DNA of 64,000 nt from Oopsacas minuta (lineage: Eukaryota > Animalia > Porifera), in NCBI GenBank assembly GCA_024704765.1, contig JAKMXF010000334.1:1-64000 (forward strand), read 5' to 3'. A program made the translations under genes and the position numbers. Below, piece by piece: positions 10,026 to 61,202 of this stretch. Position 1 is the first letter of the stretch; each line of letters starts with the position of its first letter. The notes below the pieces were generated by a model that saw only the letters and a list, made by a program, of their open reading frames with translations, was not told the DNA's origin and searched no databases.

Positions 10026-10976
10026 TAATGTTTGAATTTGTTTCTGTTACGAACTTTTAAGTGTTTTGCTCAGATTGACTGGTTTGTTGGAGGCGCAATT
10101 TCACAAGACTCACTCAAAATTGCGTGTCAACCAAAAGCAATTGTTTTTGCCCGTATCTGGCCCAACCAATCCGTTTGAGTTAGTCTATCGTCCCGGAATG
10201 TCTGAAACCCAATCGAATCCATTTTTATCAGTGCATTTATTTTTTCGAAGGAACAGATCTTTTTTACACAACCTAATCAATGAATTTATGTGACAGTCAC
10301 AGTAAGTTTGGTGTCCTGCTATTTAAGGTCTCACGCATCGTTCTAGCAGCCATTAGATCCCTAGTTTCCATATTTTAAGTCATAACCCTACTAAACACAA
10401 CGTACATAACTCTCAACACTTTGAATTGTATAAGAGATCTGGATTACACTTCTATTCATTGAAACATGGTTTTCATACCTTTTATGGATTTGTAAACTCA
10501 AGAAATTTGAATATATATTAGGCTAATTATAGTTAATAAATAATTATTAATATTTTAAGAAATATATCTTTGTGACAAGTCAGAATTTCAAAACTACGTT
10601 ATACGAATTGCCTGCTTTCTTGTCCATCAAACTTATACTGTAAGGTATGGCTTATTATGGCTGTCAACAGTTTTGTTTATTAATTGCAAATTGATTGCTT
10701 AGAAATATTTACAAAATCATTACTGCTAATATGAAATTAGTTCCTTTCTATTATTACTCTATAATAATGTAATTAGCGTACTATGCTATGGGTTTACACC
10801 TTTAGTTTTGATATAAAATGATTGAAGGACGGTTTATATGTAATTTGGATTGTAAGTTGAGTTACAATGTGTGTGTCATAGTTTACTTCTTTGATAAAAT
10901 ACTGTAAATTTCACCTATATAATCTATAGAGCAGCTATAGGACAACGTTTACCTTATTCACTCCAGTAGATTCACT

Positions 10977-16103
<5,127 letters not shown>

Positions 16104-41772: not shown

Positions 41773-44700
41773 ATGGATGACCAGAATACAAGTGTCGAAT
41801 ATATTTCTGATAACGAAAACGCTCCACAAGAAGAGACAAACTCATTCCAGAAATCAGAATTAGGCGATTTGAGATTGTTAGCTAAACAGAATAAGTTTTT
41901 AACTTTGCATAGAGGTCATGTACAATTCCATCGGTTGCTCCGTATGATGTTAAGCATCGTATGTTGTATATTATACATATCACAGACTTGGTTGTCCCCC
42001 AGTCATTATCCGTACCCGTCGTATTGCTGTGGTGTTGCACAATACACTACACAGCCTTGTGTATTAGACAGTTACAAGAACAGGACCGTAGGCTGGGCCA
42101 TGAAGCGAGCTGGTTGTATTTACACGAACAATCTTTATAAAGTGTACCCAGACGCTAGTGCACAATATGTGTTAGCGAATAGTAGTGAGGTTAGTTTCTC
42201 TGAATATACGAATGGCCAGTGTAGATCTTATTGCAATAAGGGTATTAACTGTAGTAACGAAATTATACAATTGTGTCATTGCGCAATTATGTGTGGCGAT
42301 ACACTTTTCTGTGGAATATATGAGCCAGAAGATTGCAATGGTTTTAACTACTTGAAATTAATCTTCTATGAAAAGCCCCTTTGGTTGTACTTGCTGCAGA
42401 TCGTGTGTTCATTATTGGCTACTTCTTATGCAATTGTTCGGTCTGTATTGTTATGGAAACGTGGACTATGGATTACAAAAATAATCGACGGTTATTTTAT
42501 AATAGATTGTATAAACGGTGCTCTGTCGCTTTCCAGTTTAGCATACGTACCGTGCTTTAAGGATGTCTACATACCATTGTTCCTACAGTGTTTCACTGCT
42601 AGAATCATTATAAATAACATTCTATACAGTTTTGACGTCACTAATAGTCCAAATAAACTCCTGACACCTGTTATACAAAAAATCATAGCAGCTCTATTAG
42701 GTTTGGCTTGTATTCTATTTTCATTTATTTGCCTAGTGCATTATCTCGAGAGAATTGCCTGTCCTCAGTCATCGCATGTTACAACACTTTTCCAAAGCCT
42801 ATGGTTTGTCGTGGTAACCATAACAACCGTGGGGTATGGTGACAAATACCCGAGCACACCACTTGGACAACTGGCAGTTATTTTCCTCATCCTAATAATT
42901 CTCCTATTCCTGCCACAAACCTTGAATGATATTTTGGAATTGATCGACGACTCAAAACAAAATTATAAATTTTATAGCGGTCGTAAGAAGAACAAACACG
43001 TAGTACTATGTGTATCCAAACTCGACATGACATTATTAAACGATTATTTGGATGAGTTCTACTCACAAGAGGAAAACGTGTCACTCGTCACTGTCATATT
43101 GACGTCACAACCACCTACTCCACTTGTTAAGATCCGGTTGAGTAGTTCATTATGGAAGAAAAAAGTTTTAGTTATTGTCGGTTCGGCTCTGAAACAACGT
43201 GATTTGGAACGTGTAAAGTTGGAGTTAGCGAAAGCGTGTATTCTTCTGTCCGACCGTACGACAGACGATGCCCAGTTTTCAGATCAAGAAACCATTCTCC
43301 GTGCTTCTTCTATACAGCGTTTAGCCCCGCATGTCAATCTGTATGTCCATATATTGAAACCTGAAAACCGTATGAATGTAAAGTTCGCAAACCAAGTTGT
43401 TTGTGAAGGCCAGCTGAAACAAGTTTTAATGGCAAATAATTGCATATATCCCGGGCTATCTTCGTTCGTAACACTTCTTCTACGTACTACTTCTCCTGGT
43501 CAAGCGAAAGATAGGGCAAGTTGGCAGAAGTTGTATGATTATGGCTCTGGAAATGAGATTTATGATATAAAGCTGAAAGATAGCATGCTTTTTAGTGGTT
43601 TAGCTGGACGGAATTTCTTGTTTGCATCTGTAATAATTGTACGTACTACACAGGTGTTACTTTTCGCAGTAAAACCCGCGAATGAAACTGAGATATTACT
43701 CAATCCAGGTCGACACCATATTTTACAAAATGAGGATATTCTCTACTATATTTCACAAGACAGAGAGGAGGAAATGTTGGTGGAAGGAGGGATTAGCGAT
43801 GAAGAAATCGGACGTTTGGGCAAGATTTTCATGCCCGGCGCTCCTGGTACTGTAACCAAAGGGAACGACACGTTATCTCGTGTAGCATATGATAGTTGTC
43901 TAAGCGATTCAATACAAATTGATGAGATTAATGTTTCAATAGATCAATCTAGAGATATGAGTCGAAGGGAAAACAGACGTAGTTTGATAAAACAGAGAGC
44001 AATATCACCAGAACACGACGTAGAACCTGGTAAAGTCGAAGAACAACCACAAGGGAAACTCACTCCACTGTTGAAATCGTTAACAATCGGACATAACTTC
44101 AATCCAATTCATTTCAGATCAGATCATAATACTGAGAAAGGATTAAAGCAAACAGATTTCCACGGTCGCATGTCTACAATGCTACGAGACAGTGCTCAGA
44201 CTTTTGAATTACAAAGCTTAGTTGATACAGAGCAATGTGCTAGAAATGAGATTCTTGAGAATTTCTATAATCAAGATTCTGAGACAACAAATATTTCTGT
44301 TAATCAAGTCCCAACTTATTTTGGTGTTAAAGAGAGAGTCCGCCATCTGAACAAAGAACCTCTCAGCTTGTGCTGCCTACAGTCTGGCTGGAAAATCCCC
44401 TGTCACGATTCGGAATTCACAGCTGTCAAGAAAATCCAACAACCAGATGACGTTGAGCGCATGCTATTCCTAACCGGATATAAGAATCCGTTAATTGTCT
44501 GCGCTAGTGAATCCGGCTCACAGCTATACGAATTTCTATTACCCCTCAGAGCTTATCATATCCCCAGAGAAGAGTTAATACCAATCGTACTGTTACTACC
44601 TAGCATTCCTGATACAGCATTCCTCGAGGCTATATCCTGGATACCATATATTAAGTTCATAATTGGTAACCAAGATTCTGTGGATGACCTTATAATAGCT

Positions 44701-46218
44701 GGAGCTCTTGATGCAGTAGGGATTATTATATGTCTAGGTGATGGCACTCCAGAATTGAAAGAGGAAGGCAATATGGTGGATGCAAGTCGCATCAGTACCG
44801 CTCAGAAAATGTCACAAATATTTGTAAGCACAAAGTTCTACGTTGAGTTGACAGAGAGATGGAGTATGCGATATTTGAAACTAGAAAGTGGACATTCGTT
44901 CCATACTCTGATGCCTAAAAATATAAGAGATTTTATACATACACCCTATTTCATGTCGAGCCAAGCGTTCGCACCGTCTATGATGGATACACTTCTCTAC
45001 CAGTGTACGCAGAAAGATTATATCCTTGATTTAGTCTGCTTATTGCTTGGGTTAAAACAAACACCTGGGTCTGGGTATATTGGGAAGTTTGAAGTCACTC
45101 AATCAGATATTGATACTTATCAAACATACGGACGATTAATGCTGAGCTTGGCCAATAGTACAAATGATTTACCACTTGCAATATACCGTACGCGAATAGT
45201 AAAAGTTAAAAATTCATTGGAAAAAATGAACTACGAATATGAAAGTACTAAATTATACTTAGCAAAACGTGCGCGTAACTTGAAAATATTTGATCAAATC
45301 CCAGATTATCCAACAAAATTCGAACACAGTCACATTCTAGTCAACCCCCCAGTAAACACGCCATTGAGACGTAAAGACGTTTTACTAGTGCTTAAGGTAT
45401 GCTCACAAGAACAATACAATATTATACATAACTTTAAGTCTCCGACAAGACGCGCATTCCTATTGCCTCGAGATTTATCCGGTTGTAGTGAGGATAGTGA
45501 TGACGAGCCTAAATTGGCTGCATCTCGTAAGAGACTGTCTTTTAAGAAAATAAACCCTGGTTTCCAAAAGAAGGATTTTTCAAAGAAATTCTCAGTTTCA
45601 AGTTTCAGAAAACGCTCACATAAATCTACCTACATTGGCAGTCGTTTCCCAACTGAGGTGCCGCAGAGAAGGGGAATTTATGAAAAATCGCATAGTTTCG
45701 ATATTGCCATGTTTGAGCGGCCAATGCTGGAGGATATTCGAAGACAACACTCTTTGGATGTTACTTGTCCAAGCAAGAACAAGTCGCACTTTTCCTTTGG
45801 AAGACAGCATTCATTGGACGTTACTCGGCATAATGAGAATAAGTCGGACATTTCAAGTAGTCCCAGTGATTTAGATTTTATAGAAATAGTCGATAGGAAG
45901 GAAACATGTAATGAAGAAGTGAGGAACAAACCTTTTCTATTAAAATCCCCGCGAGCACAAAAACAGCCAGGTAAGAGGCAAGTTCGCAAAACGCCTGCTG
46001 TAAAACAAAATCCTCCATCGAAACAATTTGGAATTGCAGGAATGTTTCTCAAGAAAACTCCAAAACCGATTCAAATGAAAAACAGACGAGCAGTAGTAAA
46101 CAAACAGAAACCTGCCATGAAACGGATGATGTATGCTAATTCCGCATCGGAAAGACCTGAGATAACTATAACAAGTATTGATATGGAAACACAACATTAT
46201 TCTGACCTGAACGATTAA
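41773..46218 (+). CDS. KCNT: Slo2/KCNT-family potassium channel, 1481 aa, single exon
   Basis: S1-S6 helices, pore LWFVVVTITTVGYGD, RCK1 KHVVLC and SGNEIYDI, RCK2 PYFMSSQAF, and ILVNPPVNTPLRRKDVLLVL. Confidence 0.9.
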   Translation: MDDQNTSVEYISDNENAPQEETNSFQKSELGDLRLLAKQNKFLTLHRGHVQFHRLLRMMLSIVCCILYISQTWLSPSHYPYPSYCCGVAQYTTQPCVLDSYKNRTVGWAMKRAGCIYTNNLYKVYPDASAQYVLANSSEVSFSEYTNGQCRSYCNKGINCSNEIIQLCHCAIMCGDTLFCGIYEPEDCNGFNYLKLIFYEKPLWLYLLQIVCSLLATSYAIVRSVLLWKRGLWITKIIDGYFIIDCINGALSLSSLAYVPCFKDVYIPLFLQCFTARIIINNILYSFDVTNSPNKLLTPVIQKIIAALLGLACILFSFICLVHYLERIACPQSSHVTTLFQSLWFVVVTITTVGYGDKYPSTPLGQLAVIFLILIILLFLPQTLNDILELIDDSKQNYKFYSGRKKNKHVVLCVSKLDMTLLNDYLDEFYSQEENVSLVTVILTSQPPTPLVKIRLSSSLWKKKVLVIVGSALKQRDLERVKLELAKACILLSDRTTDDAQFSDQETILRASSIQRLAPHVNLYVHILKPENRMNVKFANQVVCEGQLKQVLMANNCIYPGLSSFVTLLLRTTSPGQAKDRASWQKLYDYGSGNEIYDIKLKDSMLFSGLAGRNFLFASVIIVRTTQVLLFAVKPANETEILLNPGRHHILQNEDILYYISQDREEEMLVEGGISDEEIGRLGKIFMPGAPGTVTKGNDTLSRVAYDSCLSDSIQIDEINVSIDQSRDMSRRENRRSLIKQRAISPEHDVEPGKVEEQPQGKLTPLLKSLTIGHNFNPIHFRSDHNTEKGLKQTDFHGRMSTMLRDSAQTFELQSLVDTEQCARNEILENFYNQDSETTNISVNQVPTYFGVKERVRHLNKEPLSLCCLQSGWKIPCHDSEFTAVKKIQQPDDVERMLFLTGYKNPLIVCASESGSQLYEFLLPLRAYHIPREELIPIVLLLPSIPDTAFLEAISWIPYIKFIIGNQDSVDDLIIAGALDAVGIIICLGDGTPELKEEGNMVDASRISTAQKMSQIFVSTKFYVELTERWSMRYLKLESGHSFHTLMPKNIRDFIHTPYFMSSQAFAPSMMDTLLYQCTQKDYILDLVCLLLGLKQTPGSGYIGKFEVTQSDIDTYQTYGRLMLSLANSTNDLPLAIYRTRIVKVKNSLEKMNYEYESTKLYLAKRARNLKIFDQIPDYPTKFEHSHILVNPPVNTPLRRKDVLLVLKVCSQEQYNIIHNFKSPTRRAFLLPRDLSGCSEDSDDEPKLAASRKRLSFKKINPGFQKKDFSKKFSVSSFRKRSHKSTYIGSRFPTEVPQRRGIYEKSHSFDIAMFERPMLEDIRRQHSLDVTCPSKNKSHFSFGRQHSLDVTRHNENKSDISSSPSDLDFIEIVDRKETCNEEVRNKPFLLKSPRAQKQPGKRQVRKTPAVKQNPPSKQFGIAGMFLKKTPKPIQMKNRRAVVNKQKPAMKRMMYANSASERPEITITSIDMETQHYSDLND

Positions 46219-46845
46219 GAGCATTATATTTGTTTAGAACATATATATGTATCTCCCTTTAATTAACATTGATTATTGATATAGAATAATATGAAATAGC
46301 TGTAGTAGAGAAATCTTGGATTGATTACCTCTCCCTGTAACCGACACATTGGGATTGCCTATTGTCCTTTGTAGGGAGATATCCGCTTCTAGGAGATTGA
46401 TTAAGTATTACGTACAGTCTTGCTTGAATGATAAATTATTTTCATTAAAATATTAACATTTATTGTGCGAAAGGTCACAGAGAGGCAAATTCTCACTGGT
46501 TATCCTTGAGTCTCGCGGATTTTTGGCTCCTAAACTGTACATTTTGATGCCAAATCCGAATCTCAAGCATTTTTAGGATGGATCTGATCGGTTGGTGAGT
46601 GGCCAGGTTGGCATCTATGGATGTCGTGTTGCAAATTTTCCCTGAACATCTTTCTCCAACAATAATTAATAGCCAATTACCATGAGTAGTTCGAACACAA
46701 CCAAGGGTTAAAAACGAAAAACATACATAACTTTCCACTCAGATTAATACTGAGCCTTATAACTAATGTATAGTCAGCACAGTAAAATAGGGTTTCTTCC
46801 CAACAAAATACATTTTCTAATCCATATACGTACATAATTAAAAGT

Positions 46846-49800
46846 ATGGCAATTAGTATGAGTAGTGAAATGAATGATGCTGATATAGAGATGTTGTTTG
46901 GAGAAGATCAGGAAGGTTTCAATCTTGAAGAGATGCTCATGTTTCCAGAGGAGGTTGAAGTTGCATTAGAAAAAGTTAGTTCCAATTGGCCTTATATTTC
47001 AATACATTTATTACTATTTTATGTTTTCTAATTATTCATGCTAGCCAACCTTTAGATTCCACTAAATGACTGTCCAGGTTATTTCTGGTTTTCTCATTTA
47101 GGCGTTCAGGGATTCACTGCACTTATCAATGCATATTTCTCACCAACTATTGCATAAATATTTGGCATTTCTGCCTCTTAATGATTTTAAAGTTCATCCA
47201 CGCATAATTTACATCTTATTTTTGTAATTATTTATGGATTCCTTGAGTTTCCCCGAATTTATTTAATTAGCCATTAAATGGTTCTCAACGAGCTTAGCAT
47301 CAGGAAGAGAAATTCTGATGTTTACAGGCAAAAGTATACTAAGAAATTGACAGGCATGAGTTGGCAGTTAGCAGTCATGCGTATGTAAAACAGCTACAGT
47401 GGATGGCGGTTATAAGAACACAGGATATACGTTGAGCTGCCATCCTCTGGAAAACTTTTCTCATATAATTCTGTATATTTTATACTGGTTAAAGAAATGT
47501 CTTACTAATTTGCTACTCGCAAGGGCGTTCTTATAGCCAGCATCCACTGTAGTAGTTCAATATTGTAAAATACACAGATTCCGATGCTAATAGTATTGAT
47601 AAATTTGATTTATTCCATAAGCAAGGCACTGGCCATCCGAAATTAAATTAAATCCAGTTCTCACCAAACCATAACTAATAGAATTACATATTATTTTTAT
47701 ATTTTCCTTGACTTTCGTAAACAATGGACATTTTGGGAATCATCACTCATGGCTAGCAGTCGACAATCTGAAAGCAACGAAAACGAACAATTGGCATTCT
47801 CACTAGAAACCTATCCACTAGTTATCCAACCGCCTGATCATTCACCTGAACTTATCCTTGTCGACTCGATTGATGAGGATTTTGATTACGACAACCCCCG
47901 AAAACGTAAGCACCCTGTGAACCCGATTGAATGCTCCCAGGTAGTTGTATCTCCACCCAAACCAAAATTAGATACATCAGCAGAACTCGATTCTTATTGT
48001 TGTTCAATTTGCTATGAACCATGGACAACTACTGGGATACATAGATTAGTGTCATTGAAATGTGGGCATCTTTTTGGGGAGAATTGCATCGACAAATGGT
48101 TGCGTCAGTCAGCACAGACCTCTGAGAGGAAATGCCCTCAGTGTAAACGTCTCGCAGCTTTCAAAGACATTCGACCAATCTACGCAACAAAACTTGTAGC
48201 AGTTGATAATTCTGAATTAGCATCTGCACAGAAACAGGTTGAGTCTGAAAAAGCTAATACAATTCAGGCCAAAAAGTCTGAAACGAATATGGCTCTCAAA
48301 TACCAGCTTTCTAGAGCTGAATGCGAACGTTTGAAATTACAAGTGCTAGAACTTGAGGGGAAATTACAAAATAAACAAATCATTAACGATGAAAGTGACA
48401 GTCAGGAATCGGAGATGGATTTAGTGAGTTGTAAAGATGACTCAAAAATGGAATTAGCTGTCTCGAAAATCAAAGAGCTTTCCCTTTCCTCATCAGGAGG
48501 TTGTCGTATTTTAGAAATCAGTTCATCTCTAGGTATGATTCTCGTATCACGTCCATCCACTTCATTATTATTCCGTGGTTGCGGACTGGCTAAAATAAGC
48601 ACACGAGACTTGAAGGAATATCAATTCGTTCCTGTGCATAGTAATGTTATTCGTGACGTCAAATTTTGTCCAAATAAGGAAGATTTGCTGCTTAGCGTTT
48701 CAACTGATAAAACTGCGAAACTTACCAGTATTATTACCAATTTGAATGTATCTAGCTATGTGCTATCCGCACAGTCTTGGGCATGTTCATGGGATATTGA
48801 AGATCCGAATTATTTCTACGCAGCTCTGAATAACGGTAAAATTGAACAGTTTGATATTCGACTGACTAACAGTTGTGTAAAAACTCTATCCATTGGTGTT
48901 TCAAAGCCAATAACTTCAATTTGTTCTGTACCGCCAGCGAATGTTGGTGGGATTCTTGTAGCGACTATTGGAGGGTGTTATTTTCTTGAGAAACATAATG
49001 TGGACAATTTCACATCTCTCTGTTTACCTGATTTAACTGGGAATTGTACCAGTGTGACCTATGACCATGAAAATGCTAAATTTCTCGCTTCATTCCGTCC
49101 AACGTTGACAATGCCGATGACACGACATGTGGTGTGTGAATTCTCGCGATATAATCTCCCTTCGCAAGCCACAGACACTTTGATTGTTTCAACACACCTT
49201 CATCAATTTACAGGTGGCTCCAGCCAGAGTGCACTTTCTAGATCGCAACTTTTCACACCTGTTTCTCGGCCATCTCGCCTATGTATCGCATTTGGTGACG
49301 AATCAACGCGCTCACTCGAAATCTGCGATACTTCAAATTCGAAAAAACTAACATGCTATACTAGTAAAGCAGTAGTTGATGTCAAATCTTATTTCAATAC
49401 TATTGCAGCTCTCACTGATGAAAAATTGTTTATTTATGAATTGAAATAATTACATACCAATCGTACTTATTAGAAACTTTATGGACTGATTGTTCTCTAT
49501 ACTCTCAAATTAGACTTACCTCAATTATCAAATTTTAATGAAATGGTGATGTGTATTTGAAAATCCTGTTTAGAAATATGTGAGTATTCTATATTAGTAA
49601 ATACAGTAAGACCGCCACAAACGAGGGCAATAACCCCGAAAATTGTTACCGGTTTTCGTTAAACAATCCCACTTTGTGGAAGTTCATTTATATGGCACTA
49701 GGAATTCGCATTCTAAATCACAGGAGAATACATTGGTACATTCTGTAAGGGACAGGTTAGTATGGCTTCAGGAATAGCGATAAGTGATGAGGATGTGTAT

Positions 49801-52800
49801 ATCAGTGATGCACGACTCCATTGCATATTTGAGTTTAAATTACCGAATTTCAAATTAATAACTAGAGTAGGAAAGGTAGGATCTGGTATGGGAAGTTCCT
49901 TTATCCTCGTAGCATCACCATAGCTCATAACGAGGACATATTTGTTACTGATAGTCATGACAACAGAGTTGTTGTTATGACACCTAAACTAAACTATAAA
50001 CATTCCATTACACACAGCTCCATGACAAGACCATATGACGTCAAACTACTGGACGATAAGGTTTACATTCTGAGCTGTAAAGACAATCCTTGTCTCCATC
50101 TATTCAATCTTACTGGTGAAAAGCTCCGTTCATATATTTCATGTAGTGAGCAAGGCAACGAACAAGTTATGCAATGTCATTCATTCTGTTTCGATAAGAA
50201 ACAGAATATTATAATGGGTGACTGTCGTGCTAATAACATAAAAGTGTTCACTCAGGAAGGAGTTCTGCTACACACACTGGGAGATACTCAAGAAGAATAC
50301 AAGAAAATCTACTCTGAGGGCATTGTAGTTACCAATGATAACAAAATTATTTGTAGTTCTCATTGTACTATCTTTGCATACACATTTTCTGTAACTAATT
50401 TAATCTATCAAAAGCTCCCTAAATAACAATTGTGTAGCAATGGTATCTATTACTATGGGCTTCTAACAAGGTATCACCAGGATACCACAGTTATCAGCCT
50501 ACGAATATATCACAGATACAAATCATCAAGTTTATAGCTCTTTTCAATACGATTCGAATAATACGTATCATTAATTTTACAAACACTCTTCACTTTGCTT
50601 GCTCGCGATCAGTTCGTATCCTATCGGTTGCTTCCTAACTGTATTTTATTCCCCATTAGATTTGGTGTTATGGTTGTCAGGATTGAAATTAGTTTCGATT
50701 ATTCCTCTTAATCAATTCTTTAATGTCTTAGAGCACGTTTGATTAACATGAAAAATACAAAAAAGTAGAGTATTACAATACAATTTTAATTCTAAGTTCA
50801 AAACTTGAACAAACCTAAGAAATTCATTACTGTGTCTGTCTGAGAACTGCCCTACACATCCTCACTAAATTTCCGCTATTTTTCTGTTCCCATTTGGCCG
50901 CAGCTATATTCAAAGCATTTTTGAATTCGCTTCTTTCTTCTCTACTTAAATACACCCAAAGACAATCGAACAAATCCTGAATGAATAATGGTTCAATGAT
51001 AATGTCGTGTTTAACTAAATTTAACTGTTTTCCAAAATGTATCATATACCGATTCCGATATTCATCATTATATTCATTGTGTAGTTTAGTTCTATGAGGT
51101 TGTTCTGTGTCTGGTTTCAAACTGAATCCTGTCAGGCAATGCACTCCATCATTTCGGCATTTCTCACATAGACTTGATAAGTGTGGTTTTTTCATCACCC
51201 AATCATTAGTGACATTTTCCAAATGATATACTTTTGTCGGCCATTCAAATAACCACATTCTTTACATTCTAACTTGTAACCTTGCCATGAATACCCAGAT
51301 GTCCATGCACTTCTACAATTCTCACACTTATAATGCCCGAAAAAACGCTTCGAATCTATACCATTCGCTAATGGTAGTGTTTCTAAATATCCACTCACAA
51401 TTTCAATGTTCTCTCCAGGTATACGATAGTATATTGGTATGAGTTGTGGTTTCCTTGATTTTCTGCTTTTTCTTGAACGACCTGGGTATCTACTTGCCAT
51501 TAGAATGTTGTAATTGTTGGAAGAATCTTGTTATTTTAATTCAAGAATTACAAAGCCTAATAATTAAATCTTAATTAACTCCTTTGTTCATAAAAATAGA
51601 ATTTTCTTACGTCCTTTTGTCCTAAAATTATCATAATTCACATGGCATGACCGCATGAGGTTCTTATTATTACATCACTGAATAATCATTTTCAGACAAT
51701 TAATATTTCCGATAACTAATGATACAGTCGAACCTCCAAGATCCAGGTACTTTTTCCAAAAAGTTTGATTTGACCATTTCCAGCTACTCTTCCTAAAATA
51801 GAGTTGTACTTCATGTCTGACACGTTTCTTAGTGACCACCAATTATAACCTCTAGTTCCGAGAATTCTTATGCATCTCGATATTTCATTATATGTCTACC
51901 ATTAATTAATAATGCATACTTGCCATCGTGAGTGAATAAAAAATCAGACAGAACGTACCGGGGCATTTCGGGACGTAGCATACCTACATTAGGTCAGACT
52001 CCAAAAAAACGGACATCTACTATTTTTGGCAAGCTTTGGCTGGACATTAGTCTCAACACATGTCCGAAAATCAGGAGAGTTAGCAAGGCACCCTCCAGAC
52101 AAACCTGTCCGGATCTGAGGTTCGACAGTACAAATCTCCCTGATACTCCAATTCCCCAGCTAAGCCATTGAATGTAAATATATTATTCAAAACAACTAGT
52201 TAATCTAGAAATGACTAAACACAAATGAAGTTAAGTATTACAAATACAATTATATGGGTAATTATTAATTCAAATCTAGTTAGAACTAAAATGAAACATT
52301 AACGTGTTTGTCTAAGTACATCCTTACAGATATCTGCTAAATCTTCTCTATTTCTTTGCTGCCATTTGGCCGCGGTTATTTTCAAAGCTTCTTTGAACTC
52401 GCTTTTATCCTTTTTATTTAAAGTATCCCAGAGATTATCGAATAATTCTTGAATGAATTGTCCTTCAATCTTAATCTCCTGCTTATGTAGACCCAGCTGT
52501 TTTCCAAAGTGTATCATAAACTGATTTCGATGTGAATAATCATCATCATTATGCAGCTTTGTTTTACGCTTTTTATCTGTGTCAGGTTTTAAAGCCAATC
52601 CAGTGAGACAATGTACTCCATCGTCTTGACATTTCTCACATAGACTTGATAAATGCGGTTTTTTCATTACAAAATCATCATCTTTATTTTCCAAATGATA
52701 AACTTTTGTCGGCCATTCAAACAAATCACATGTTTTACATTCTAACTGGTACCCTTGCCATGAATACCCAGATGTCCATTTATTTCTACAAATCTTACAT

Positions 52801-55800
52801 TGATAATGCCCGAAAAATCGTTTCGGATCTATCCCATCTTCTAATGGTTCTTTTACCAAATATCCACTTACAATTTCCTCATTTTCTCCAGGAATTCTAT
52901 AGTATATTGGAATTAATTCTTGTTGCTTTGATTTTCTCTTTTTTCTTGAACGACCTGGATATTTGCTTGCCATTGAAGTTTTTTTTTGACAGAATATGTG
53001 ATAATTATATGTGTAAAGTTTCAATGCCTAATTTATTTGGTAAACTTATCCTTCTGAATTCATAATAATAAAATTTAATTGTGCTGACTATAGTGTAACA
53101 GTATTAATGTATTCTAAATCTATCAGAAAACTGTAATAATGGGTAAGTATTATCTTATTCCATAAAATTTCTCTACATTTTTAGACATTTACGAATTTGT
53201 CAAATCATTAATTAGTGATCCTAACAGAGACCAAAGGTTTTTGAGATGAAATTGATGGCTAATAGGATATTTGCCCATCATAATATCCCTACAGTTATTT
53301 CGTTATGAATCAATGTTATTGCATCTAAGTCTGACTTTTTGGATCAGGGGTTTATCTAAGTGCTTGGCTGACACCTAAAAACCCGACTGTGAGACCCATA
53401 TTAGTACAGGATATGTTTCTGTCTAAAAAAGGGACATCCAAGAGAGTTCCTGCAAGAACATTGTCGGACCAGAAATTCCTGGATGAACTCTTGCTTTCGA
53501 TCCGTGAGACTTGACAACTATGATACTACCATCAATTGTAGATTATTATAAACTATATGATAATGACACATAACTGCATTGCAACCTTTGACCAGAAAGA
53601 GGTTATGCTGTATCTATAATAACGACCCTATGATTTATATCAAACGTCAAATTTCGCATCGTCTACTCATCGGTGTAGTCGCCGTGTGGCCTGAGTGGCT
53701 GGTCCAATGATCCCCTAACAATTATATCAGTCCCCAAATAATTGTTCTCCACTATGCCCACGAGTCTAGTTAGCCTTCTTGTTAGAAAAATGTGTTTATA
53801 TTTCCTTTATACATTTCAAATATATTTCGAGTTAAAGGCATATTCCCTAGTCTTAAGCATGTAGATGCAAAGCACCCAGCGGTGTAGCTTGCTTTGGCAG
53901 ACTACTGGCTCACGGGTGCCGCATTAGGGGGGAGGTGACTTGAAATAAGGGGAATGTGGTGCAACATAAAAAAACACCCTGTCTAAGCCACTGAAACTAC
54001 CACAACTTAAATTACACCATACACGATGCAACAAAGTTACATCGTGTATGGTTGGTTAACTGTGTCATTGTACGTAAAATTATTCAGAGCAAACTTAACA
54101 ACAATAAATTAGATAGTATAGAAATAGAATTTGAATAAATACAAAAGTAAATAAATACCTAATTCTCAAATGAATCAGTAAGTAGTCTGTCTTAGTACAT
54201 CCATACACTTATCAGATATATCTACTCTATTTTTCTGCTTCCATTTTATTGACGCTATTTTCAAAGCTTCTTTGAATTCGCTTTTACATTCTCGACTTAA
54301 ACTATCCCAGAGATTATCGAATAAATTTTGTATGAATTGTGGCTCAATGACAATATCGTACTTATCCAGACCCAGTTGTTTTCCAAAGTGTATCATATAT
54401 TTATTATTCTCTTTCAGACGCGTTCCATCAAACTCAGGAATAATGTGCACGTTATGGTTCAACATGTGTCCAGTTAGACAATGTACTCCATCCTTTTGGC
54501 ATTTCTCACATAGATCTGTTAAATGCGGGGTTTTCATTTCATGATCATCACTGACATTTTCCAAATGAAATACTTTTGTTGGCCATTCGAAGAAATGGCA
54601 TTTTTTGCATTCTAACTGGTAACCTTGCCATGCATACCCAGATGTCCATCTACTACTGCAATTCTCACATTGATAATGCCCGAAAAATCGCTTTGATTGT
54701 GTACCTTTCTTTAGTCTTCTTTTTTCCAAATATCCACTCACAATTTCAACTCCTCCAGGAAGACGATAGTATATTGGTATGAGTTCATGTTCGGCTGATT
54801 CACTCTTTTTCCTTGAACGACCTGAGAGCCTACTTGCCATTAGAATATTGTTATTATACACTCCATTTGTTAACAATTGTGATATATATGAAGTTGTGAA
54901 CAATTAAGAATGCTTACCAGCAATGCCTAATTCTCAAAAGTAACAAATTCTGCACGAATTCTAGCTTGTGAGCATAATATAGAATTTCAAAATGTGCAGA
55001 ATTCCTGAATTGTTGGTGGGTGTTCTCTTATTTCAGTCATATGATTAACTACATAGATGGCAATTAACCTCATTTTCCAAACATAATTCAAACAGTTTAT
55101 CCCTCCCAATAGATCAGCCCTTGACCCCTTGGGTAGAAATTATTACAGGGACTCTATTTTACTCTATGATGCGTACTAACGTCAAATATATATTTACAAT
55201 TTGTACATACATAATATGTGTTTGTCCACTTATATTTCTTGTTAGAAATTATTGCAAATTTCTTTTAGTTATTTCCAGATATGGATCCTTTATGTGCAAG
55301 AAAGTTTAATGAGATCGATTTCATAAATAAGGAGTTTCCTACTGAACAGGTATTGTTGTTGACTTCTTGTTAATTGTTGTTCCCTACAACTTAATAATAT
55401 ATTTTCATTTAGTCTTTAGCTAATATCGATGACTTTATGAGTAGGATGAAGTTAGAAATAAGGTAAGTACAAAGTTAACACCCACTTGTCCTGCAGTTTG
55501 CATACTCACAACAAACTTTCAATAGACCCTCGTTAATACACCAAATGACCTTCAAATTTCATTATGCATATCCAAATTAGCCGAAATATGTAAGAATCTT
55601 TAAAGAGAATATTTAATAATGGGTCTAACGAAGTGAATGTAAATTCTGCGTTATGCTCTCCGCGGCCATATTTTAACGAGAGTCTAGATCCATTGTCCTG
55701 AAACAGTGTTTCCCGCATAATTTTGGTAATCGCTCATTTTGGGATTGTGTGGGGCTTCCGTCGCATATACACATATTAAGCCATATGTATAGAGTCTTCA

Positions 55801-58800
55801 TTTTAACGCAGCTAGATATTCTAAGTGCGTTAATTGACGCGCTTAACGCGCGCTTTGGGGGAAACACTGTCCCAAAGTATCTATATGATAATCCTTTATC
55901 CATATTCTTATATACCAGAAATCTGGATAAAGATATTCGTCAGATAGTACATGGTGAAGCTGGAGTAGGATATGAAGGAGAAGTGGTGAGTATATTCTGT
56001 AGTGAATTTGAAAACAAATATTAGTATACTTTTGTAGCTTAAAGTTATGGTCAGGTATTGAATTAATTCAGTATGTACTTCTATGGTGGATAATATAGTA
56101 CGTGGTTCTTTATTCAATACAATATTTGCAATTCGTCTATTTGCTATAAGCAATTTTTCATGTATTTGTTGTATAGTAAATACTAATACACATTATAAAT
56201 TCTCGGATTAACAATGTATGCAATATATGATTTGCTTTTAGACAAACTCCATTGTATTTCTGTTGGACAATAGTCGATGGTGGAATTAGAGACCTCATAT
56301 TTTAGAAACATACAATCTTTGTCAATTTCTATCTACCATCATATACATACATTGATATCATTTAGGCATTATCTGAGGCAAGAGATGCAATCAACAAGCT
56401 ATTTTCGAGAATAAAAGACATAAAGGAAAAAGCAGAAACTTCTGAGAAAATGGTTTGTATATGCTTAATGAATGCACACATCTTCTGATAGTAAATATTG
56501 TCTGGGTGAACTATTCCATCCCTCGCCTACTAGTTGTTAGTGCTAATCGCTTATAAGAACACCCTTAGGATAGTAAAACATGTTTTTATAATAAGTAGAG
56601 CTCCGCCTTAAACATTTAACACACGATCCGATAGCATCTGGGATTTTACTGTCACTAGAAAAATCCTAGCAAAATCAACTTTCAATATCAGTTTAGGGTG
56701 ATTGGTGAGTTAATACAAGTTTGCATTTTAATAACCAGTTGTAATGTCGAAAAGAAAATCTAAATTAGATTTCCCATTATCTGTTACTTCATTTGTTTCA
56801 ATGAAGATGCATACATGTGAGTTAATTACATTGGAACCTTCTACAACACTCCCATATCATGAGTACTTGAAATTTGAGCTACAAAACGGATCACAAGATC
56901 TAACTAATATATCTTTCAATGAAGAAAGTATTAGATATTGTATAGCCTTCAAATTTGGTGACATAACTTCTACCAGGATGATTCTGTAATACAGAGTTTC
57001 ATGAAACAGTAGCTCGAATGTTTATGAGAAATCTCGCATAATTATCAACTTAAGTATAGAATACGTATATGATCATTTTGAAATTTAGTCAAGTCTTCGC
57101 TTGTCAAATTGTGAACTTCCGTTATATCGAACACGGATATTTCGAAATACCCGCTCATATCGAAGTCCGAAATTGTACAAATATGGTCCCAAACCGTCCA
57201 ATTCACATTAATTCGTCAGTTATATCGTACTCCGATTTTATCGTTATTTTTCGCGGTCCCTTAAGCTTCGATAAAACATGAATTTACTGTACAACTTCGA
57301 GCTAAACCTATTGCTATAACCCATTGACAAGAGAGTAGTATTCACCATTAATTCTGTTTATAGGTTAAAGCCATTACAAAAGAAATTAAGGAACTCGATA
57401 CAGCCAAAACTAATCTAACATTCTCTATTACAACTTTAGAGAATCTCTCAATGCTAGTTCGTTCTATTGAAGATTTATCGTGAGTTATCTCCTCGATAAA
57501 TGAGTTGAAATATCACATTTGATTCAACTAAAGTGCTAAACCTTATTTTGCAATCAGACAAACGGATAGACAGAGTCGAATAAACAGACGAACAAACAAA
57601 CAATATAAGGGAACAACTGAGATTTTTAAAATACATTACACGTAATTATGTAATTATGTAATTATGTAATTATGTATATTCTTTATATAGCAAATGGTTT
57701 GTCGTATGGAAATGTCCTATACAACATCGAAAGGTTACTTTTCAAAAAATCCTTTGCTATTTGAACAATATTTTGAGTGAAATTATATTTACTAAATTAA
57801 GATTCATGTTGTAGGCAGTGGCGCTGCCAGGTTTTTGTCACGGTGGTGTCGGCCATGCGGGTGGTGCGAGCAGTGTTGAATTGTATTGAGCTATTAAGTA
57901 ATTATTTGTCAAGTAACTCAAGAAAGAGATTAATTAGTTCATAGATTGTCCTAAATCTAAACACTACTGCCTGAAACCATACAGAAATTATATTTATCAA
58001 ATATTCACTACCATTTTACTAATTTCAGCTTACATTCGTCTGAACAAGTTCAGATGATCCGCATCAGCCCCGCAACATCTTGGCTACACCTCTGGTTGTA
58101 GGTACGTATCTGCATCAATGTACACCAGTTAAAGTATACGTATTTTAATTTATGCCCAGGATCTGTTATTTAAATTTGATTATTCTTAATACGTACTATC
58201 GTAATTTGTCCTACTTGCCACCAATCACGAGGAAGAATATTATACTTGTTATGGGTTATGAAAAAATCTAACTGATGTAGCCACAATATATTATTGTCCA
58301 GTTTAAACAAATTGGACACTGCACAATAAGAGTGTTTACTAGCTTCAATACTATTTTCAATTCATGAACATTTATTTCAAAGGCATTTATTGAAACTAAA
58401 AGTGAAACATGAGCGGATTCATTTCTCGTATTTGGCCAAACCTCTCTCATATTGAAACATCATATTTCAAAACATATTTTGATTGCATAACAACCTTCAT
58501 GATTCGGTAGACGTTTATTAATTAAACAAAATTATAGTTTAGTGCTTTCATTTTGTAATTGAATTTCTTCTAGAAATTGGTACTTTTTCATATCTTATAT
58601 TGCTAATTTTGACACGAATATATTCTATTAAATCATTTTAAATATTCTAAGAATGTAATTCCTTAAAATTTATTTCTCCTTATTTTATATAAATGTCAAT
58701 ATCAGATTATTAAACAATAAATTAGATTTGACCATATAAGTCAAGCTCGTTTAACTCAACTATATTTCTAAGAAATCAATCTTCTATGTATAGCAATTTG

Positions 58801-60060
58801 CTTATACGATTGATTCCTTATACTTTACTATTAATAATTCAATATATATTACTCACTTGCAATTACTGTAACATAATACTACAAATGCACACATTTGCGA
58901 ACATAACTCATTTGAAATATATATTAAGTACAGGCGTTAAATTTCTAGGCAGAATATTGCTCAGAAAAAGTACTTAGAGGTTGAGAAGATTCTTGAAAGA
59001 ATTGGCTCTGTAAGTGATACGTTCAAACTTTTTACAGATATCAAAGAAATTACAGAATTGTTACAAAGGTAATAATAAATATTCAATATTAAGGTCATAT
59101 AATTATGAGAAATGAAAGTATTTTTATTCACAGGAAACTTACATCCTGGTATTAATATGATTATTTATACTGATAGCTTATACTCTTCGCTCCCAGCCTT
59201 CCTCACAGTTTGACCTGTTATTTGTACATTTTAGTCCGGGTTTAGCTCATCTAAACTGAAGAATATTGTCTATACTATGTCTGTGTACTGCTTGGAATAC
59301 ACATGGCATAATCGTATTTGTAGACCAGTAGATTTACAGGATAACGGGAATAGTTAAACTATTTCCTTTTTGTATTACGTATGTGTTTAAGATTCAGTAA
59401 AATGAAAAATGAACTGCATGCCCCATAAATTATATCTGGATTACTCTTAATGAGTAACAAGGTATTGAATAAGAGTTGTCTAATAATTAGACAAAACCTA
59501 TCATACACAACATAACTAGCAGGGATTTAGTGAAAGTCAAGGGAGAAATTGAACTCCATCCAGGCAGTAAAGTCATTAAGGTTTGCACTTTGGAGGTAAA
59601 TGAGCACTGACAATTTCTGAATGTTCATAAGGCAGTCAGACTACTATAATGTTGACCATTATCTAGGTGGTTGGAGGCGCCTACAAGTGTCAGTTCAGCA
59701 GTACATAAATTTCCGACCCTACATTGTTGACAGATCAAGTATAAAGTTAATATATTGGGCTTTGGAAATTTGCATGAATTTGGCATTAAATATTCAAGTT
59801 TGTGTGGCATGAACTTTTTTGGAACATCACCTGGCAACCTGCGACCATGAGACTCTAATGTTTCCGTCCAAAAAGTGTCACGCGAGGATAGTTCATACTA
59901 GATAAAGTGTGACATGGATTCCTATTAGTATTTGAAAAACCTAATATTCTTAACACTTCACCTATCTCTCTCTATATTTAGTGTTACTCAAATACAAAAT
60001 GATTTAAAAATACAAATAAAGAAGGATTTTGAAGAAGGAACAACCACAAAAGGAATAAAG
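46846..60060 (+). CDS. VPS53: Vacuolar protein sorting 53 (GARP/EARP subunit), 5' part. Exons 46846-46974, 55269-55349, 55413-55462, 55919-55985, 56366-56452, 57364-57479, 58949-59068 and 59982-60060 (243 codons); it presumably continues past the window.
   Basis: Spliced translation LMFPEEVEVALEK|LFPDMDPLCARKFNEIDFINKEFPTEQ|SLANIDDFMSRMKLEIR|NLDKDIRQIV...|ALSEARDAINKLFSRIKDIKEKAETSEKM|VKAITKEIKELDTAKTNLTFSITTLENL follows human [21 protein letters not shown]...INTLFPTEQSLANIDEV...[42 protein letters not shown]. All junctions are GT-AG and in phase. Confidence 0.9.
47749..49449 (+). CDS. RFWD3: E3 ubiquitin ligase RFWD3 (RING + coiled coil + WD40), intronless, nested in VPS53 intron 1
   Basis: [34 protein letters not shown]...KCPQC, then WD40 segments [13 protein letters not shown] and [17 protein letters not shown]. 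Confidence 0.92.
   Translation: [566 protein letters not shown]
49604..49712. mobile_element. Truncated MITE family B copy abutting the NHL pseudogene
   Basis: cagtaagaccgccacaaacg ... ctttgtggaagttcatttatatggcactaggaattcg, shared with the copy at 25535. Confidence 0.6.
49719..50426 (+). pseudogene. 5'-truncated, frameshifted NHL-repeat gene fragment
   Basis: The + frame reads ITGEYIGTFCKGQ...VYISDARLHCIFEF...RVGKVGSG, shifts near 49890, then reads FLYPRSITIAHNEDIFVTDSHDNRVVVMTP...IIMGDCRANNIKVF. No start codon or coiled coil upstream. Confidence 0.75.
50827..51500 (-). pseudogene. zf-3CxxC + death-fold-like gene, copy 1, with a 1-nt frameshift near 51250
   Basis: Paralogous to 52299 and 54175. 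The minus strand reads tgt ggttatttgaatgg (14 nt) where copy 2 has tgt gatttgtttgaatgg (15 nt). Confidence 0.8.
51723..52130. mobile_element. Tigger/pogo-like MITE between zf-3CxxC copies 1 and 2
   Basis: tacagtcgaacctccaagatcc ... ggatctgaggttcgacagta. Confidence 0.65.
52299..52973 (-). CDS. zf-3CxxC (ZCCHC24/ZAR1/RTP-type) zinc finger + death-fold-like C-terminus, copy 2, 224 aa
   Basis: KRFFGHYQCKICRNKWTSGYSW...ECKTC...PHLSSLCEKC...HC follows the ZCCHC24-type pattern FGEYRCPKCNRKWMSGNSW...CIKC...HPQHLCEKC. ATG at 52973. Confidence 0.85.
   Translation of the reverse strand: MASKYPGRSRKKRKSKQQELIPIYYRIPGENEEIVSGYLVKEPLEDGIDPKRFFGHYQCKICRNKWTSGYSWQGYQLECKTCDLFEWPTKVYHLENKDDDFVMKKPHLSSLCEKCQDDGVHCLTGLALKPDTDKKRKTKLHNDDDYSHRNQFMIHFGKQLGLHKQEIKIEGQFIQELFDNLWDTLNKKDKSEFKEALKITAAKWQQRNREDLADICKDVLRQTR
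54175..54840 (-). CDS. zf-3CxxC + death-fold-like protein, copy 3, 221 aa
   Basis: Same architecture as copy 2: KRFFGHYQCENCSSRWTSGYAW...CKKC...PHLTDLCEKC. ATG at 54840. Confidence 0.85.
   Translation of the reverse strand: MASRLSGRSRKKSESAEHELIPIYYRLPGGVEIVSGYLEKRRLKKGTQSKRFFGHYQCENCSSRWTSGYAWQGYQLECKKCHFFEWPTKVFHLENVSDDHEMKTPHLTDLCEKCQKDGVHCLTGHMLNHNVHIIPEFDGTRLKENNKYMIHFGKQLGLDKYDIVIEPQFIQNLFDNLWDSLSRECKSEFKEALKIASIKWKQKNRVDISDKCMDVLRQTTY
55704..55869. mobile_element. hAT-like MITE in VPS53 intron 3
   Basis: TIR cagtgtttccc / gggaaacactg. Flanks tcctgaaa / tcccaaag match at 5 of 8 positions. Confidence 0.65.
57107..57291. mobile_element. MITE family A, longer copy, in VPS53 intron 5
   Basis: Contains ccgttatatcgaacacggata, aaattgtacaaatatggtcccaaaccgt and gcggtcccttaagcttcgata, all shared with other family A copies. 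Confidence 0.7.
57642..57676. repeat. Tandem repeat (GTAATTAT)x4
   Basis: Seen directly. Confidence 0.85.
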
Positions 60061-60211
60061 GTACTTAAACTTTCCCAAATCCATCAATTCTCATATAATA
60101 TTTGCTTATAATACAAGTATACTTGCTTAGAAACTTTCGATGATAACTTAACTTCTTACTGAAGTTTCTAAGCAGGTCAAGGTGATCTGAAACTATCCCT
60201 ATAATTATATT

Positions 60212-60598
60212 TACAGTCACATCACTCATATCGAAATAAATATCTCAATCCCTTGCGCTTCGATAACCCCTGATTCCTTATCGGGCCTACATGTTAACTG
60301 TATTCTTATTACAGAGATTCTACTTTATAGTGTCAGCGTATACAGAATACAGTGAACCTCGTTAATACGAACACCAACGGAGTTTCATGTTAACCAGACT
60401 GATACCAATTCCACTGTAGGGACCTGATAATGTGTATACACAGTTATACGAATTATGGATAAGACTAACTTATTTTTCGTCTTGTCCGTAAATTCTTATA
60501 ACTGAGTTTGTCATAAAAGGTAACTCACGATAAGGAGTCTCGTTTTATCGAAGCACACCGGATTGAGATATTAACCTTGATATGAGTGATGAAGTGTA
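60212..60598. mobile_element. Composite MITE with ~75-bp imperfect inverted ends
   Basis: catcactcatatcgaaataaatatctcaatcc...gcttcgataa...ccttatcg is mirrored by cgataagg...ttatcgaagc...ggattgagatatt...gatatgagtgatg. Confidence 0.65.
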
Positions 60599-60881
60599 AT
60601 TATAAGAAAAGTTCATATAAGCTAATTTATGCATACACAGATTGATTTCTGAAAACTATACAAAAGCTTAACGCTCTATTAGGGTTGTGATAAGTATTAG
60701 GGTTATGATAATATTGAAAGTAATGGAATTCTGGTAATTAATTAAGGAACTTAACTCTTAATAGTGAATCTGGAAAGAAAATACATTCTAAGCGAATTTA
60801 ACATTTGAGTTAATATAAATAGCAACTGAGAAAATAAACAAAACAACAAACAAGTAAATAAATAAATTGAAAATAAATATA

Positions 60882-61202
60882 ATGGAATATTCAACATACG
60901 AATCAATTGACATTAATCAAATGAGTTACTCAATGGAGCATATTTGCGAAATGCCTATTCCTGAGTTAAATGAACTCATTTTCAAAGCGAATATGACACA
61001 AAAAGAGAAATTGGATATAAAGAATAGAAGAAAATATTACAAAATCAACAAAGCTTCTTTGAAACAGCAACTAAATCGTCTTACACAGGAAATAACTGAA
61101 TTGGAGAGGGTAAAGAAGGAATTGGAAGATGAGAGAATTCAATATAGAAGAGATATACTTTTCTACAAGATGGAGTTGAAGAAGGGGAACACAGTATATT
61201 GA
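60882..61202 (+). CDS. Small Maf/CNC-like bZIP protein with degenerate basic region, copy 1 (106 aa from the ATG at 60882)
   Basis: YSMEHICEMPIPELNELIF resembles the Maf extended homology region LSDDELVSMSVRELNQHL. It is followed by IKNRRK and the zipper TQEITELERVKKEL (MafK TQKEELERQRVEL). Confidence 0.7.
   Translation: MEYSTYESIDINQMSYSMEHICEMPIPELNELIFKANMTQKEKLDIKNRRKYYKINKASLKQQLNRLTQEITELERVKKELEDERIQYRRDILFYKMELKKGNTVY

What the first reader, a model, noticed from the sequence alone, without database searches (positions are those of the whole stretch)
46846..60060. VPS53 is a hidden host gene whose 8.3-kb first intron contains five nested loci
Seen: the isolated ORF at 46846 ends at AAA|GTTAGT and splices in frame to TTTTAG|TTA at 55269, giving ...EVEVALEK|LFPDMDPL...FPTEQ. 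Knowledge: this matches the VPS53 N-terminus (PEVQLAIEQVFPSQDPL). Six further in-phase exons follow. Intron 1 (46975-55268) therefore contains RFWD3, an NHL pseudogene and three zf-3CxxC genes. Inference: the introns of this housekeeping gene act as a landing and duplication zone for fast-evolving genes.
Basis: partly seen in the sequence, partly recalled or inferred. Interest (0 to 1): 0.8.

Follow-up and report, generated by a model that had tools for sequence, protein, structure and literature searches.

The report
Sponge VPS53 gene hosting nested genes
In the glass sponge Oopsacas minuta the first coding exon of the housekeeping gene VPS53 lies 8.3 kb upstream of the second, with five other gene loci inside that intron; this is real, but gene nesting is already known to be common in glass sponges, so the main news is a corrected gene model.

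Summary
The observation and its main reading are confirmed. The window is Oopsacas minuta contig JAKMXF010000334.1.

- **Junction seen in transcripts.** A transcript-like contig of run X4 carries the last 30 nt of the proposed exon 1 (46945-46974) directly in front of 55269. The same run shows GT..AG joints for introns 2-5.
- **Exon 1 is conserved.** It occurs in six related glass-sponge loci (five contigs) as 39 codons with a conserved ATG and GT donor. Changes fall almost only at third codon positions.
- **Exon 1 is VPS53.** A profile of the N-termini of 67 non-sponge VPS53 proteins hits only this ORF in the whole window (E = 2e-4). The phase-0 intron position is shared with a rotifer and an annelid.
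- **The GenBank model is wrong at both ends.** The 245-aa model starts at an unconserved 8-aa mini-exon (54992) and ends in a foreign bZIP-like ORF. The annotators capped introns at 5 kb.
- **Intron 1 content.** It holds an intact intronless RFWD3, a truncated and frameshifted NHL fragment, and a tandem trio of zf-3CxxC genes, one of them frameshifted.
- **The nest is old.** RFWD3 plus 1-6 zf-3CxxC copies lie in the same intron in every relative, and the copies cluster by species.

Nesting is published as common in glass sponges. This scan has already confirmed other host genes in this genome (Dicer, VPS13, Twinkle, EXD2, AGAP). Interest is modest.

The parts
46846..46974 (+). VPS53 coding exon 1. 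The first ATG is at 46846; the ATG conserved in relatives is at 46858. The donor GTTAGT starts at 46975.
   Evidence: Sequence. VPS53 N-terminal profile hit E = 2.2e-4, unique in the window. Conserved in six related loci, with changes at third codon positions. Its last 30 nt are joined to 55269 in an X4 contig.
46975..55268 (+). VPS53 intron 1: 8294 nt, GT..AG, phase 0.
   Evidence: The same intron is 4435-13807 nt long in relatives. The same phase-0 position is found in a rotifer and an annelid.
47749..49449 (+). Nested gene 1: intact, intronless RFWD3 (566 aa, RING + RFWD3 WD40), on the same strand as the host.
   Evidence: Pfam. GenBank gene call. 63-71% identical orthologues lie at the same place in relatives.
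49723..50426 (+). Nested locus 2: NHL-repeat fragment. It lacks about 190 N-terminal residues and has a frameshift between 49884 and 49902. The remaining ORF is 49977-50426.
   Evidence: tblastn of window paralogues 1533-2774 (Pfam NHL 1.8e-22) and 35345-36778 matches it in two frames, with a stop codon. It is absent from the relatives' intron 1.
50827..51515 (-). Nested locus 3: zf-3CxxC copy C, split over two frames near 51252. GenBank annotates only the 143-aa C-terminal ORF.
   Evidence: Pfam PF17180 2.1e-9 on the N-terminal part. The tblastn frame break is at 51255/51252. There is a 1-nt register change between repeat families D2 and D4.
52299..52973 (-). Nested gene 4: zf-3CxxC copy A, 224 aa as annotated (the ORF is open up to 53024).
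   Evidence: Pfam PF17180 6.5e-10. GenBank call. High X4 depth over 52600-52993.
54175..54840 (-). Nested gene 5: zf-3CxxC copy B, 221 aa as annotated (the ORF is open up to 54903).
   Evidence: Pfam PF17180 2.4e-10. GenBank call.
54992..55015 (+). GenBank's 8-aa first exon (MCRIPELL). Rejected as the main start.
   Evidence: Inferred from P0002 and the start of the gene range. No counterpart in relatives, no VPS53 similarity, and no joint listed in X4.
55269..55349 (+). VPS53 exon 2.
   Evidence: Conservation in relatives begins exactly at the AG acceptor, and the four codons before the internal ATG change only synonymously. X4 joint 55349|55413.
55413..55462 (+). VPS53 exon 3.
   Evidence: X4 joints; P0002.
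55919..55985 (+). VPS53 exon 4.
   Evidence: X4 joints 55462|55919 and 55985|56366.
56366..56452 (+). VPS53 exon 5.
   Evidence: X4 joints.
57364..57479 (+). VPS53 exon 6.
   Evidence: X4 joint 56452|57364. The loose end behind 57480 equals 58950-58979. VPS53 hits in the library search.
58949..59068 (+). VPS53 exon 7.
   Evidence: P0002.
59982..60060 (+). VPS53 exon 8, the last one in the window. The donor GTACTT starts at 60061.
   Evidence: P0002. 85% identical in L007 and L008.

Best explanation
This is the 5' third of the Oopsacas minuta VPS53 gene (a subunit of the GARP/EARP tethering complexes). Transcription starts upstream of 46846, about 630 nt after the stop codon of a Slo-type K+ channel gene. 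The polymerase then reads through 8.3 kb that holds five loci: an intronless RFWD3 gene and an NHL fragment on the same strand, and three tandem zf-3CxxC genes on the opposite strand. The spliceosome joins 46974 to 55269 in phase 0.

The intron itself is ancient: it sits at the same position and phase in a rotifer and an annelid. In the glass-sponge lineage it came to hold RFWD3 and a zf-3CxxC gene. The zf-3CxxC gene has since been duplicated independently in different species (1 to 6 copies), and O. minuta additionally acquired an NHL fragment.

- **Shown:** the exon structure, the junction, the conservation, and the identity and state of the nested loci.
- **Inferred:** the transcription start site, that the nested genes use their own promoters, and the order of the insertion events.
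For: 1. **Transcript evidence.** X4 has GT..AG joints at 55349|55413, 55462|55919, 55985|56366 and 56452|57364, at contig depth about 965-1280, against 5-40 in the introns. These joints are absent from X1-X3. X4 also has a loose end before 55269 whose 30 letters occur only at 46945-46974.
2. **Homology.** The profile of VPS53 N-termini hits only this ORF (E = 2.2e-4) and the match ends at the exon end. The spacing F-P-x-E-V-x-x-A-[IL]-x-x-[VL]-[LF]-P across the junction has no gap relative to 67 orthologues.
3. **Purifying selection.** Exon 1 is present in L002, L004, L005, L006, L007 and L008 with a conserved ATG, 39 codons and a GT donor. Differences by codon position are 4/0/17, 5/2/21 and 6/2/20, and the flanks cannot be aligned.
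4. **Acceptor.** Conservation of exon 2 begins exactly at the AG.
5. **Linkage.** Exon 1 stays next to RFWD3, zf-3CxxC and VPS53 even where the upstream neighbour changes. The Slo gene is inverted in L007 and replaced by TRAF/Nup54 genes in L008.
6. **Intron position.** It is shared with Adineta vaga and Paralvinella palmiformis.
7. **Why it was missed.** The annotators mapped RNA with TopHat -I 5000, so an 8.3-kb intron could not produce a hint.
Against: - The library type of X4 is not on record. It is treated as RNA-derived only from how it behaves.
- All four runs come from the sample and study of the assembly itself, so they are not independent of it.
- The junction rests on one Logan contig (31-mers), not on counted reads.
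Its coverage and the transcription start are therefore unknown.
- An unspliced X4 contig (54239-55298, depth 87) crosses the acceptor, so a minor form that starts inside intron 1 cannot be excluded.
Confidence: 0.95

Rival explanations
1. The GenBank model is right. VPS53 starts at the 8-codon exon 54992-55015 (MCRIPELL), which is spliced to 55269, and the ORF at 46846 is something else.
For: The deposited BRAKER/Augustus model P0002 begins this way. GTGGGT follows 55015.
Against: - No joint 55015|55269 is listed in X4, and X4 contig 23 runs unspliced over this stretch.
- The mini-exon has no counterpart in any related locus and no similarity to VPS53 N-termini.
- The pipeline could not see introns longer than 5 kb.
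- The same model is demonstrably wrong at its 3' end, where it runs into a bZIP-like ORF.
Confidence: 0.02
2. A second promoter inside intron 1 yields a minor VPS53 transcript that begins just upstream of 55269 and is translated from the ATG at 55281.
For: X4 contig 54239-55298 (depth 87, against about 965 for the spliced path) crosses the acceptor unspliced. An in-frame ATG lies at 55281.
Against: - That contig may equally be pre-mRNA, DNA carry-over, or the 5' end of the minus-strand zf-3CxxC gene at 54175-54903. Contigs do not show strand.
- The four codons before this ATG change only synonymously, and conservation starts exactly at the AG. This marks them as coding sequence of a spliced exon.
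Confidence: 0.1
3. Exon 1 belongs to another transcription unit, for instance as a shared 5' exon of RFWD3, and the X4 junction is an assembly chimera.
For: RFWD3 lies on the same strand only 775 nt downstream of exon 1.
Against: - A chimera would not fall exactly on a GT|AG pair in phase 0.
- A chimera would not reproduce the ungapped VPS53 N-terminal motif.
- The intron position is the ancestral one.
- Use by VPS53 does not exclude additional use by RFWD3; that remains untested.
Confidence: 0.02

Closest known systems
Nested genes of glass sponges (Aphrocallistes vastus genome, Francis et al. 2023, PMC10282587)
   Same: - Complete genes lie inside introns of a host gene in a compact hexactinellid genome.
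- Many of these nests are conserved between species.
- Automatic annotation misses them or cuts the host. The paper counts 2432 nested genes (12.4%) in A. vastus but only 83 in the O. minuta annotation, and blames the annotation method.
   Different: That paper does not describe this locus. Specific here are the pairing of VPS53 with RFWD3, the zf-3CxxC array of 1-6 copies in one intron, and the reason for the miss (TopHat -I 5000).
Nested intronic genes across Metazoa (Hormiphora californensis, Schultz et al. 2021, PMC8527503)
   Same: Several nested genes occur in one host, on both strands, including genes parallel to the host that the host transcript must read through.
   Different: That is a ctenophore, where spliced-leader trans-splicing is frequent. 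No leader was seen or tested at this locus.
Human NF1 intron 27b, which holds OMG, EVI2A and EVI2B (from my own knowledge, not checked here)
   Same: One large intron of a housekeeping-type host carries several small genes with few or no introns.
   Different: Those three genes are all antisense to the host and are not a tandem family. Here one nested gene is on the sense strand, and three are recent tandem paralogues.

Membership tests
VPS53 (GARP/EARP subunit) gene | Vps53_N domain (PF04100) in the product | tested here: met
   The GenBank product that covers exons 2-8 carries PF04100. ORFs holding exon 6 in relatives also carry PF04100. Exon 6 retrieves VPS53 proteins such as P0029 of Penaeus chinensis.
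VPS53 (GARP/EARP subunit) gene | Conserved N-terminal motif (F-P-P-E-V-Q-x-A-I-E-x-V-L-P-S-x-D-P-L), encoded across exons 1 and 2 | tested here: met
   Profile hit E = 2.2e-4, unique in the window. The spacing is ungapped relative to 67 orthologues.
VPS53 (GARP/EARP subunit) gene | Remainder of the protein, including the VPS53_C domain (PF16854) | not testable with these tools
   No VPS53 exon was found between 60061 and 64000, so the gene runs off the window. In relative L004, exons matching orthologue residues about 235-615 lie downstream.
Nested intronic gene arrangement | Each nested locus lies wholly inside one intron of the host | tested here: met
   All five loci lie within 46975-55268.
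Nested intronic gene arrangement | The host transcript is spliced across the nested genes | tested here: met
   An X4 contig joins 46945-46974 to 55269.
Nested intronic gene arrangement | Nested genes are expressed as units of their own | tested here: inconclusive
   X4 depth is high over zf-3CxxC copy A (52600-52993) and raised over copy B, but contig depth is a poor measure of expression. RFWD3, the NHL fragment and copy C were outside the laid stretch.
RFWD3 E3 ligase | RING finger plus the RFWD3-type WD40 propeller | tested here: met
   PF23419 1.7e-82 and RING models at residues 85-133. Orthologues are named RFWD3 in many animals.
zf-3CxxC proteins | Zn_ribbon_3CxxC_2 domain (PF17180) above the gathering score | tested here: met
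   39.4, 40.7 and 37.8 bits against a cut-off of 27 for the three copies.

The most novel reading that the evidence does not exclude
The intron-1 nest might be an operon-like unit conserved across glass sponges. On this reading the same-strand RFWD3, only 775 nt after VPS53 exon 1, has no promoter of its own. It would be cut out of the VPS53 pre-mRNA by spliced-leader trans-splicing or alternative polyadenylation, so host and guest would be co-regulated. The intron would also serve as a protected nursery for the expanding zf-3CxxC family. Nothing here excludes this, because no RNA was laid over 46500-52600.
Probability: 0.1. Interest if true: 0.5.

Novelty: new member of a known kind. Interest (0 to 1): 0.3.

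Why it matters
- **Corrected model.** This fixes a core trafficking gene in a reference glass-sponge genome. The deposited VPS53 is a 245-aa chimera that lacks its true first exon and ends in a foreign ORF.
- **A systematic cause.** The 5-kb intron cap during RNA mapping, and a gene caller that handles nests poorly, probably fragment many host genes in O. minuta. That bears on this genome's published intron statistics and on claims that genes are missing.
- **A datable example.** An ancient metazoan intron was colonised in the hexactinellid lineage and then grew from 4.4 to 13.8 kb through lineage-specific tandem duplication of zf-3CxxC genes.
- **No new mechanism is needed.** The phenomenon itself is already published.

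Tried and rejected
- **Pfam and PDB sequence searches with exon 1 and exon 2 alone** found nothing useful, because the peptides are too short.
- **No run on record as RNA** was found. The RNA-like nature of X4 only appeared once the runs were laid.
- **The library search with exon 6** returned only 35 hits, mostly fragments. These nevertheless gave the handles P0001, P0003, P0004 and P0029.
- **tblastn with eight orthologues** found no VPS53 exon after 60060 in the window.
- **No tRNA, Rfam family or inverted repeat** was found in 46200-60100.
- **Paper searches** for the sample ids of the related loci and for 'VPS53' with 'nested gene' found nothing. The species of L002-L008 therefore remain unnamed. 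They are taken as hexactinellids because their RFWD3 is 63-71% identical to the O. minuta protein, against 34-38% for demosponge RFWD3.
- **The demosponge Ephydatia muelleri** has a multi-exon RFWD3 spread over 12 kb, with no VPS53 within 10 kb. The nest is therefore not shared with that demosponge.
- **Rejected readings:** the GenBank mini-exon, the internal ATG as the main start, and a chimeric contig (see the rival explanations).

Full report
**Source.** The RFWD3 ORF of the window is found exactly once in the public collection, on contig JAKMXF010000334.1 of GCA_024704765.1. JAKMXF is the Oopsacas minuta (Hexactinellida) genome project. That paper gives a mean intron size of 341 bp and 1.59 introns per gene, so an 8.3-kb intron is an outlier in the published annotation.

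**Observation.** An ATG lies at 46846. Exon 1 ends at 46974 and is followed by GTTAGT. TTTTAG ends at 55268, and exon 2 begins at 55269. Both boundaries are phase 0, and intron 1 is 8294 nt. Exons 3 to 8 are 55413-55462, 55919-55985, 56366-56452, 57364-57479, 58949-59068 and 59982-60060. All are GT-AG and in phase.

**The deposited model.** A library search with exon 6 returned the GenBank product P0002, 245 aa.
- It contains exactly exons 2-8.
- It begins with eight residues encoded at 54992-55015.
- After exon 8 it continues into the tail of a bZIP-like ORF at 60858-61199.

In the relative L004, exons matching orthologue residues about 235-615 lie further downstream, so the real gene continues and the deposited 3' end is not VPS53. 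The authors mapped RNA with TopHat -I 5000 before running BRAKER/Augustus. A junction across 8.3 kb could therefore never have become a hint.

**Transcript evidence.** No run is on record as RNA. I laid the four listed runs, all from the assembly's own sample and study, on 52600-58500. This stretch was chosen to test the GenBank mini-exon against a far upstream exon while staying within the 6-kb limit.
- X1-X3 behave as DNA.
- X4 shows GT..AG joints at 55349|55413, 55462|55919, 55985|56366 and 56452|57364, at contig depth about 965-1280. Intron contigs lie at 5-40. None of these joints occurs in X1-X3, which argues against a processed DNA copy.
- X4 also has a loose end in front of 55269. Its 30 letters occur once in the window, at 46945-46974, the last 30 nt of exon 1. 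Thirty letters is k-1 for Logan's 31-mer graph, which is what a branch into the spliced path should look like.
- A second loose end, behind 57480, equals 58950-58979, the start of exon 7.
- No joint from 55015 to 55269 is listed. One X4 contig (54239-55298, depth 87) crosses the acceptor unspliced. It could be pre-mRNA, DNA carry-over, the 5' end of the neighbouring minus-strand gene, or a minor internal start.

**Homology of exon 1.** P0029 (Penaeus chinensis VPS53) served as the query for 100 full-length VPS53 proteins.
- 69 of them show the P-x-x-D-P motif, and in 67 it is preceded by enough N-terminal sequence. The conserved F-P-P-E-V-Q-x-A-I-E-x-V-L stretch lies directly in front of it.
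- O. minuta reads F-P-E-E-V-E-V-A-L-E-K | L-F-P-D-M-D-P-L, with the same spacing across the junction.
- A profile built only from the part before the junction hits, among 3327 six-frame pieces of the whole window, only piece 46786-47028 (19.0 bits, E = 2.2e-4; next best E = 4). The match ends at the last residue but one of the exon.

**Comparative evidence.** Fragments P0001, P0003 and P0004, and RFWD3 orthologues P0139 and P0141, led to loci L002-L008 in metagenome-labelled assemblies. L003 and L006 are the same contig read in opposite directions, and L003 does not reach exon 1. Their RFWD3 is 63-71% identical to the O. minuta protein, against 34-38% for demosponge RFWD3, so I take them as other glass sponges. 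Their species are unknown.
- The six loci that reach far enough upstream (L002, L004, L005, L006, L007, L008) all hold an exon 1 of 39 codons. It has a conserved ATG (aligned with 46858), ends in GAAAA[AG], and is followed by GTT[AC]G[TC]. Exon 2 follows [CT]AG.
- Amino-acid identity of exon 1 is 77-90%.
- Nucleotide differences fall at codon positions 4/0/17, 5/2/21 and 6/2/20, with synonymous sites saturated. Sequence outside the exon cannot be aligned.
- Conservation of exon 2 starts exactly at the acceptor, and the four codons before the internal ATG change only synonymously.
- The GenBank mini-exon has no counterpart in any of these loci.
- Exon 1 stays linked to RFWD3 and VPS53 where the upstream neighbour differs. 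The Slo gene is inverted in L007 and replaced by TRAF/Nup54 genes in L008.
- The intron position (…Q | [IV][LI]PS…, phase 0) is the same in Adineta vaga and Paralvinella palmiformis. The intron is therefore ancestral, and glass sponges enlarged it.

**Content of intron 1.**
- *RFWD3* (47749-49449, +) is intact and intronless. In the demosponge Ephydatia muelleri, RFWD3 is spread over about 12 kb in at least eight pieces, with no VPS53 within 10 kb.
- *The NHL locus* (49723-50426, +) matches residues about 190-376 of a 413-aa NHL paralogue of the window, in two frames and with a stop codon. It is a truncated, frameshifted copy. It is absent from the relatives' intron 1.
- *Three zf-3CxxC copies* form a tandem array on the minus strand, with periods of about 1472 and 1870-1879 nt. 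Copy C is frameshifted near 51252.

In relatives, intron 1 is 4435 to 13807 nt long. It always holds RFWD3 plus 1 (L007, L008), 2 (L002, L004, L005) or 6 (L006) zf-3CxxC genes. In a tree of 13 copies each species' copies group together: 3 label changes (the minimum possible), against a shuffled mean of 6.5, with 0 of 200 shuffles as low. L002 has 100/100 support; the other species groups are supported more weakly. This fits independent duplication or gene conversion within each species.

**What is known.** Francis et al. 2023 report 2432 nested genes (12.4% of genes) in the glass sponge Aphrocallistes vastus, and say many of them are conserved. They count only 83 in the O. minuta annotation and attribute low counts to annotation settings. 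Schultz et al. 2021 document nested intronic genes across animals, including genes parallel to the host. Follow-up notes of this scan on other host genes of this genome reached the same verdict. I checked their claim that this is known against the paper itself. The locus is therefore a well-supported new example of a known kind, plus a correction of the annotation.

**Left out.** I did not search, fold or look up the joined protein.

Noticed in passing
window 57131-57327 (VPS53 intron 5): Summed contig depth jumps to about 8,400-12,600 in the DNA-like runs, against about 70-220 nearby. Many loose ends lie at 57114-57201. This looks like a short, very high-copy repeat.
   Followed up: no
window 60061-61199: The GenBank VPS53 model joins exon 8 to the last 37 codons of a 114-aa bZIP-like ORF (60858-61199; no Pfam hit). 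The real VPS53 continues beyond the window.
   Followed up: partly
window 55161-55263: Runs X1 and X3 have a contig that matches up to 55263 and then continues into 30 letters that are not in the window. Depth at 55256 reaches 1246 in X1. A short repeat or a structural variant seems to end 5 nt before the exon 2 acceptor.
   Followed up: no
L002:5544-7370 versus L008:12628-13305: L002 and L008 encode the identical exon 1 peptide. L002 has a near-identical inverted pair of zf-3CxxC genes (branch lengths 0.03 and 0.06), while L008 has one copy. This points to a very recent inverted duplication.
   Followed up: partly
L007:429-4892; L008:256-8942: Synteny breaks directly upstream of VPS53 exon 1. 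The Slo channel gene is inverted in L007 and is replaced by Nup54 and TRAF-type genes in L008.
   Followed up: partly
L009:13446-21780 (Ephydatia muelleri): The demosponge RFWD3 is split into at least eight coding pieces over about 12 kb, whereas every glass-sponge RFWD3 seen here is one ORF. This fits retroposition or wholesale intron loss.
   Followed up: partly
window 1533-2774 (+) and 35345-36778 (-): Two intact single-ORF NHL-repeat genes (413 and 477 aa) are paralogous to the fragment in intron 1.
   Followed up: partly
window 41773-46218: A Slo/BK-type K+ channel is encoded as a single 1481-aa ORF that ends about 630 nt before VPS53 exon 1.
   Followed up: no
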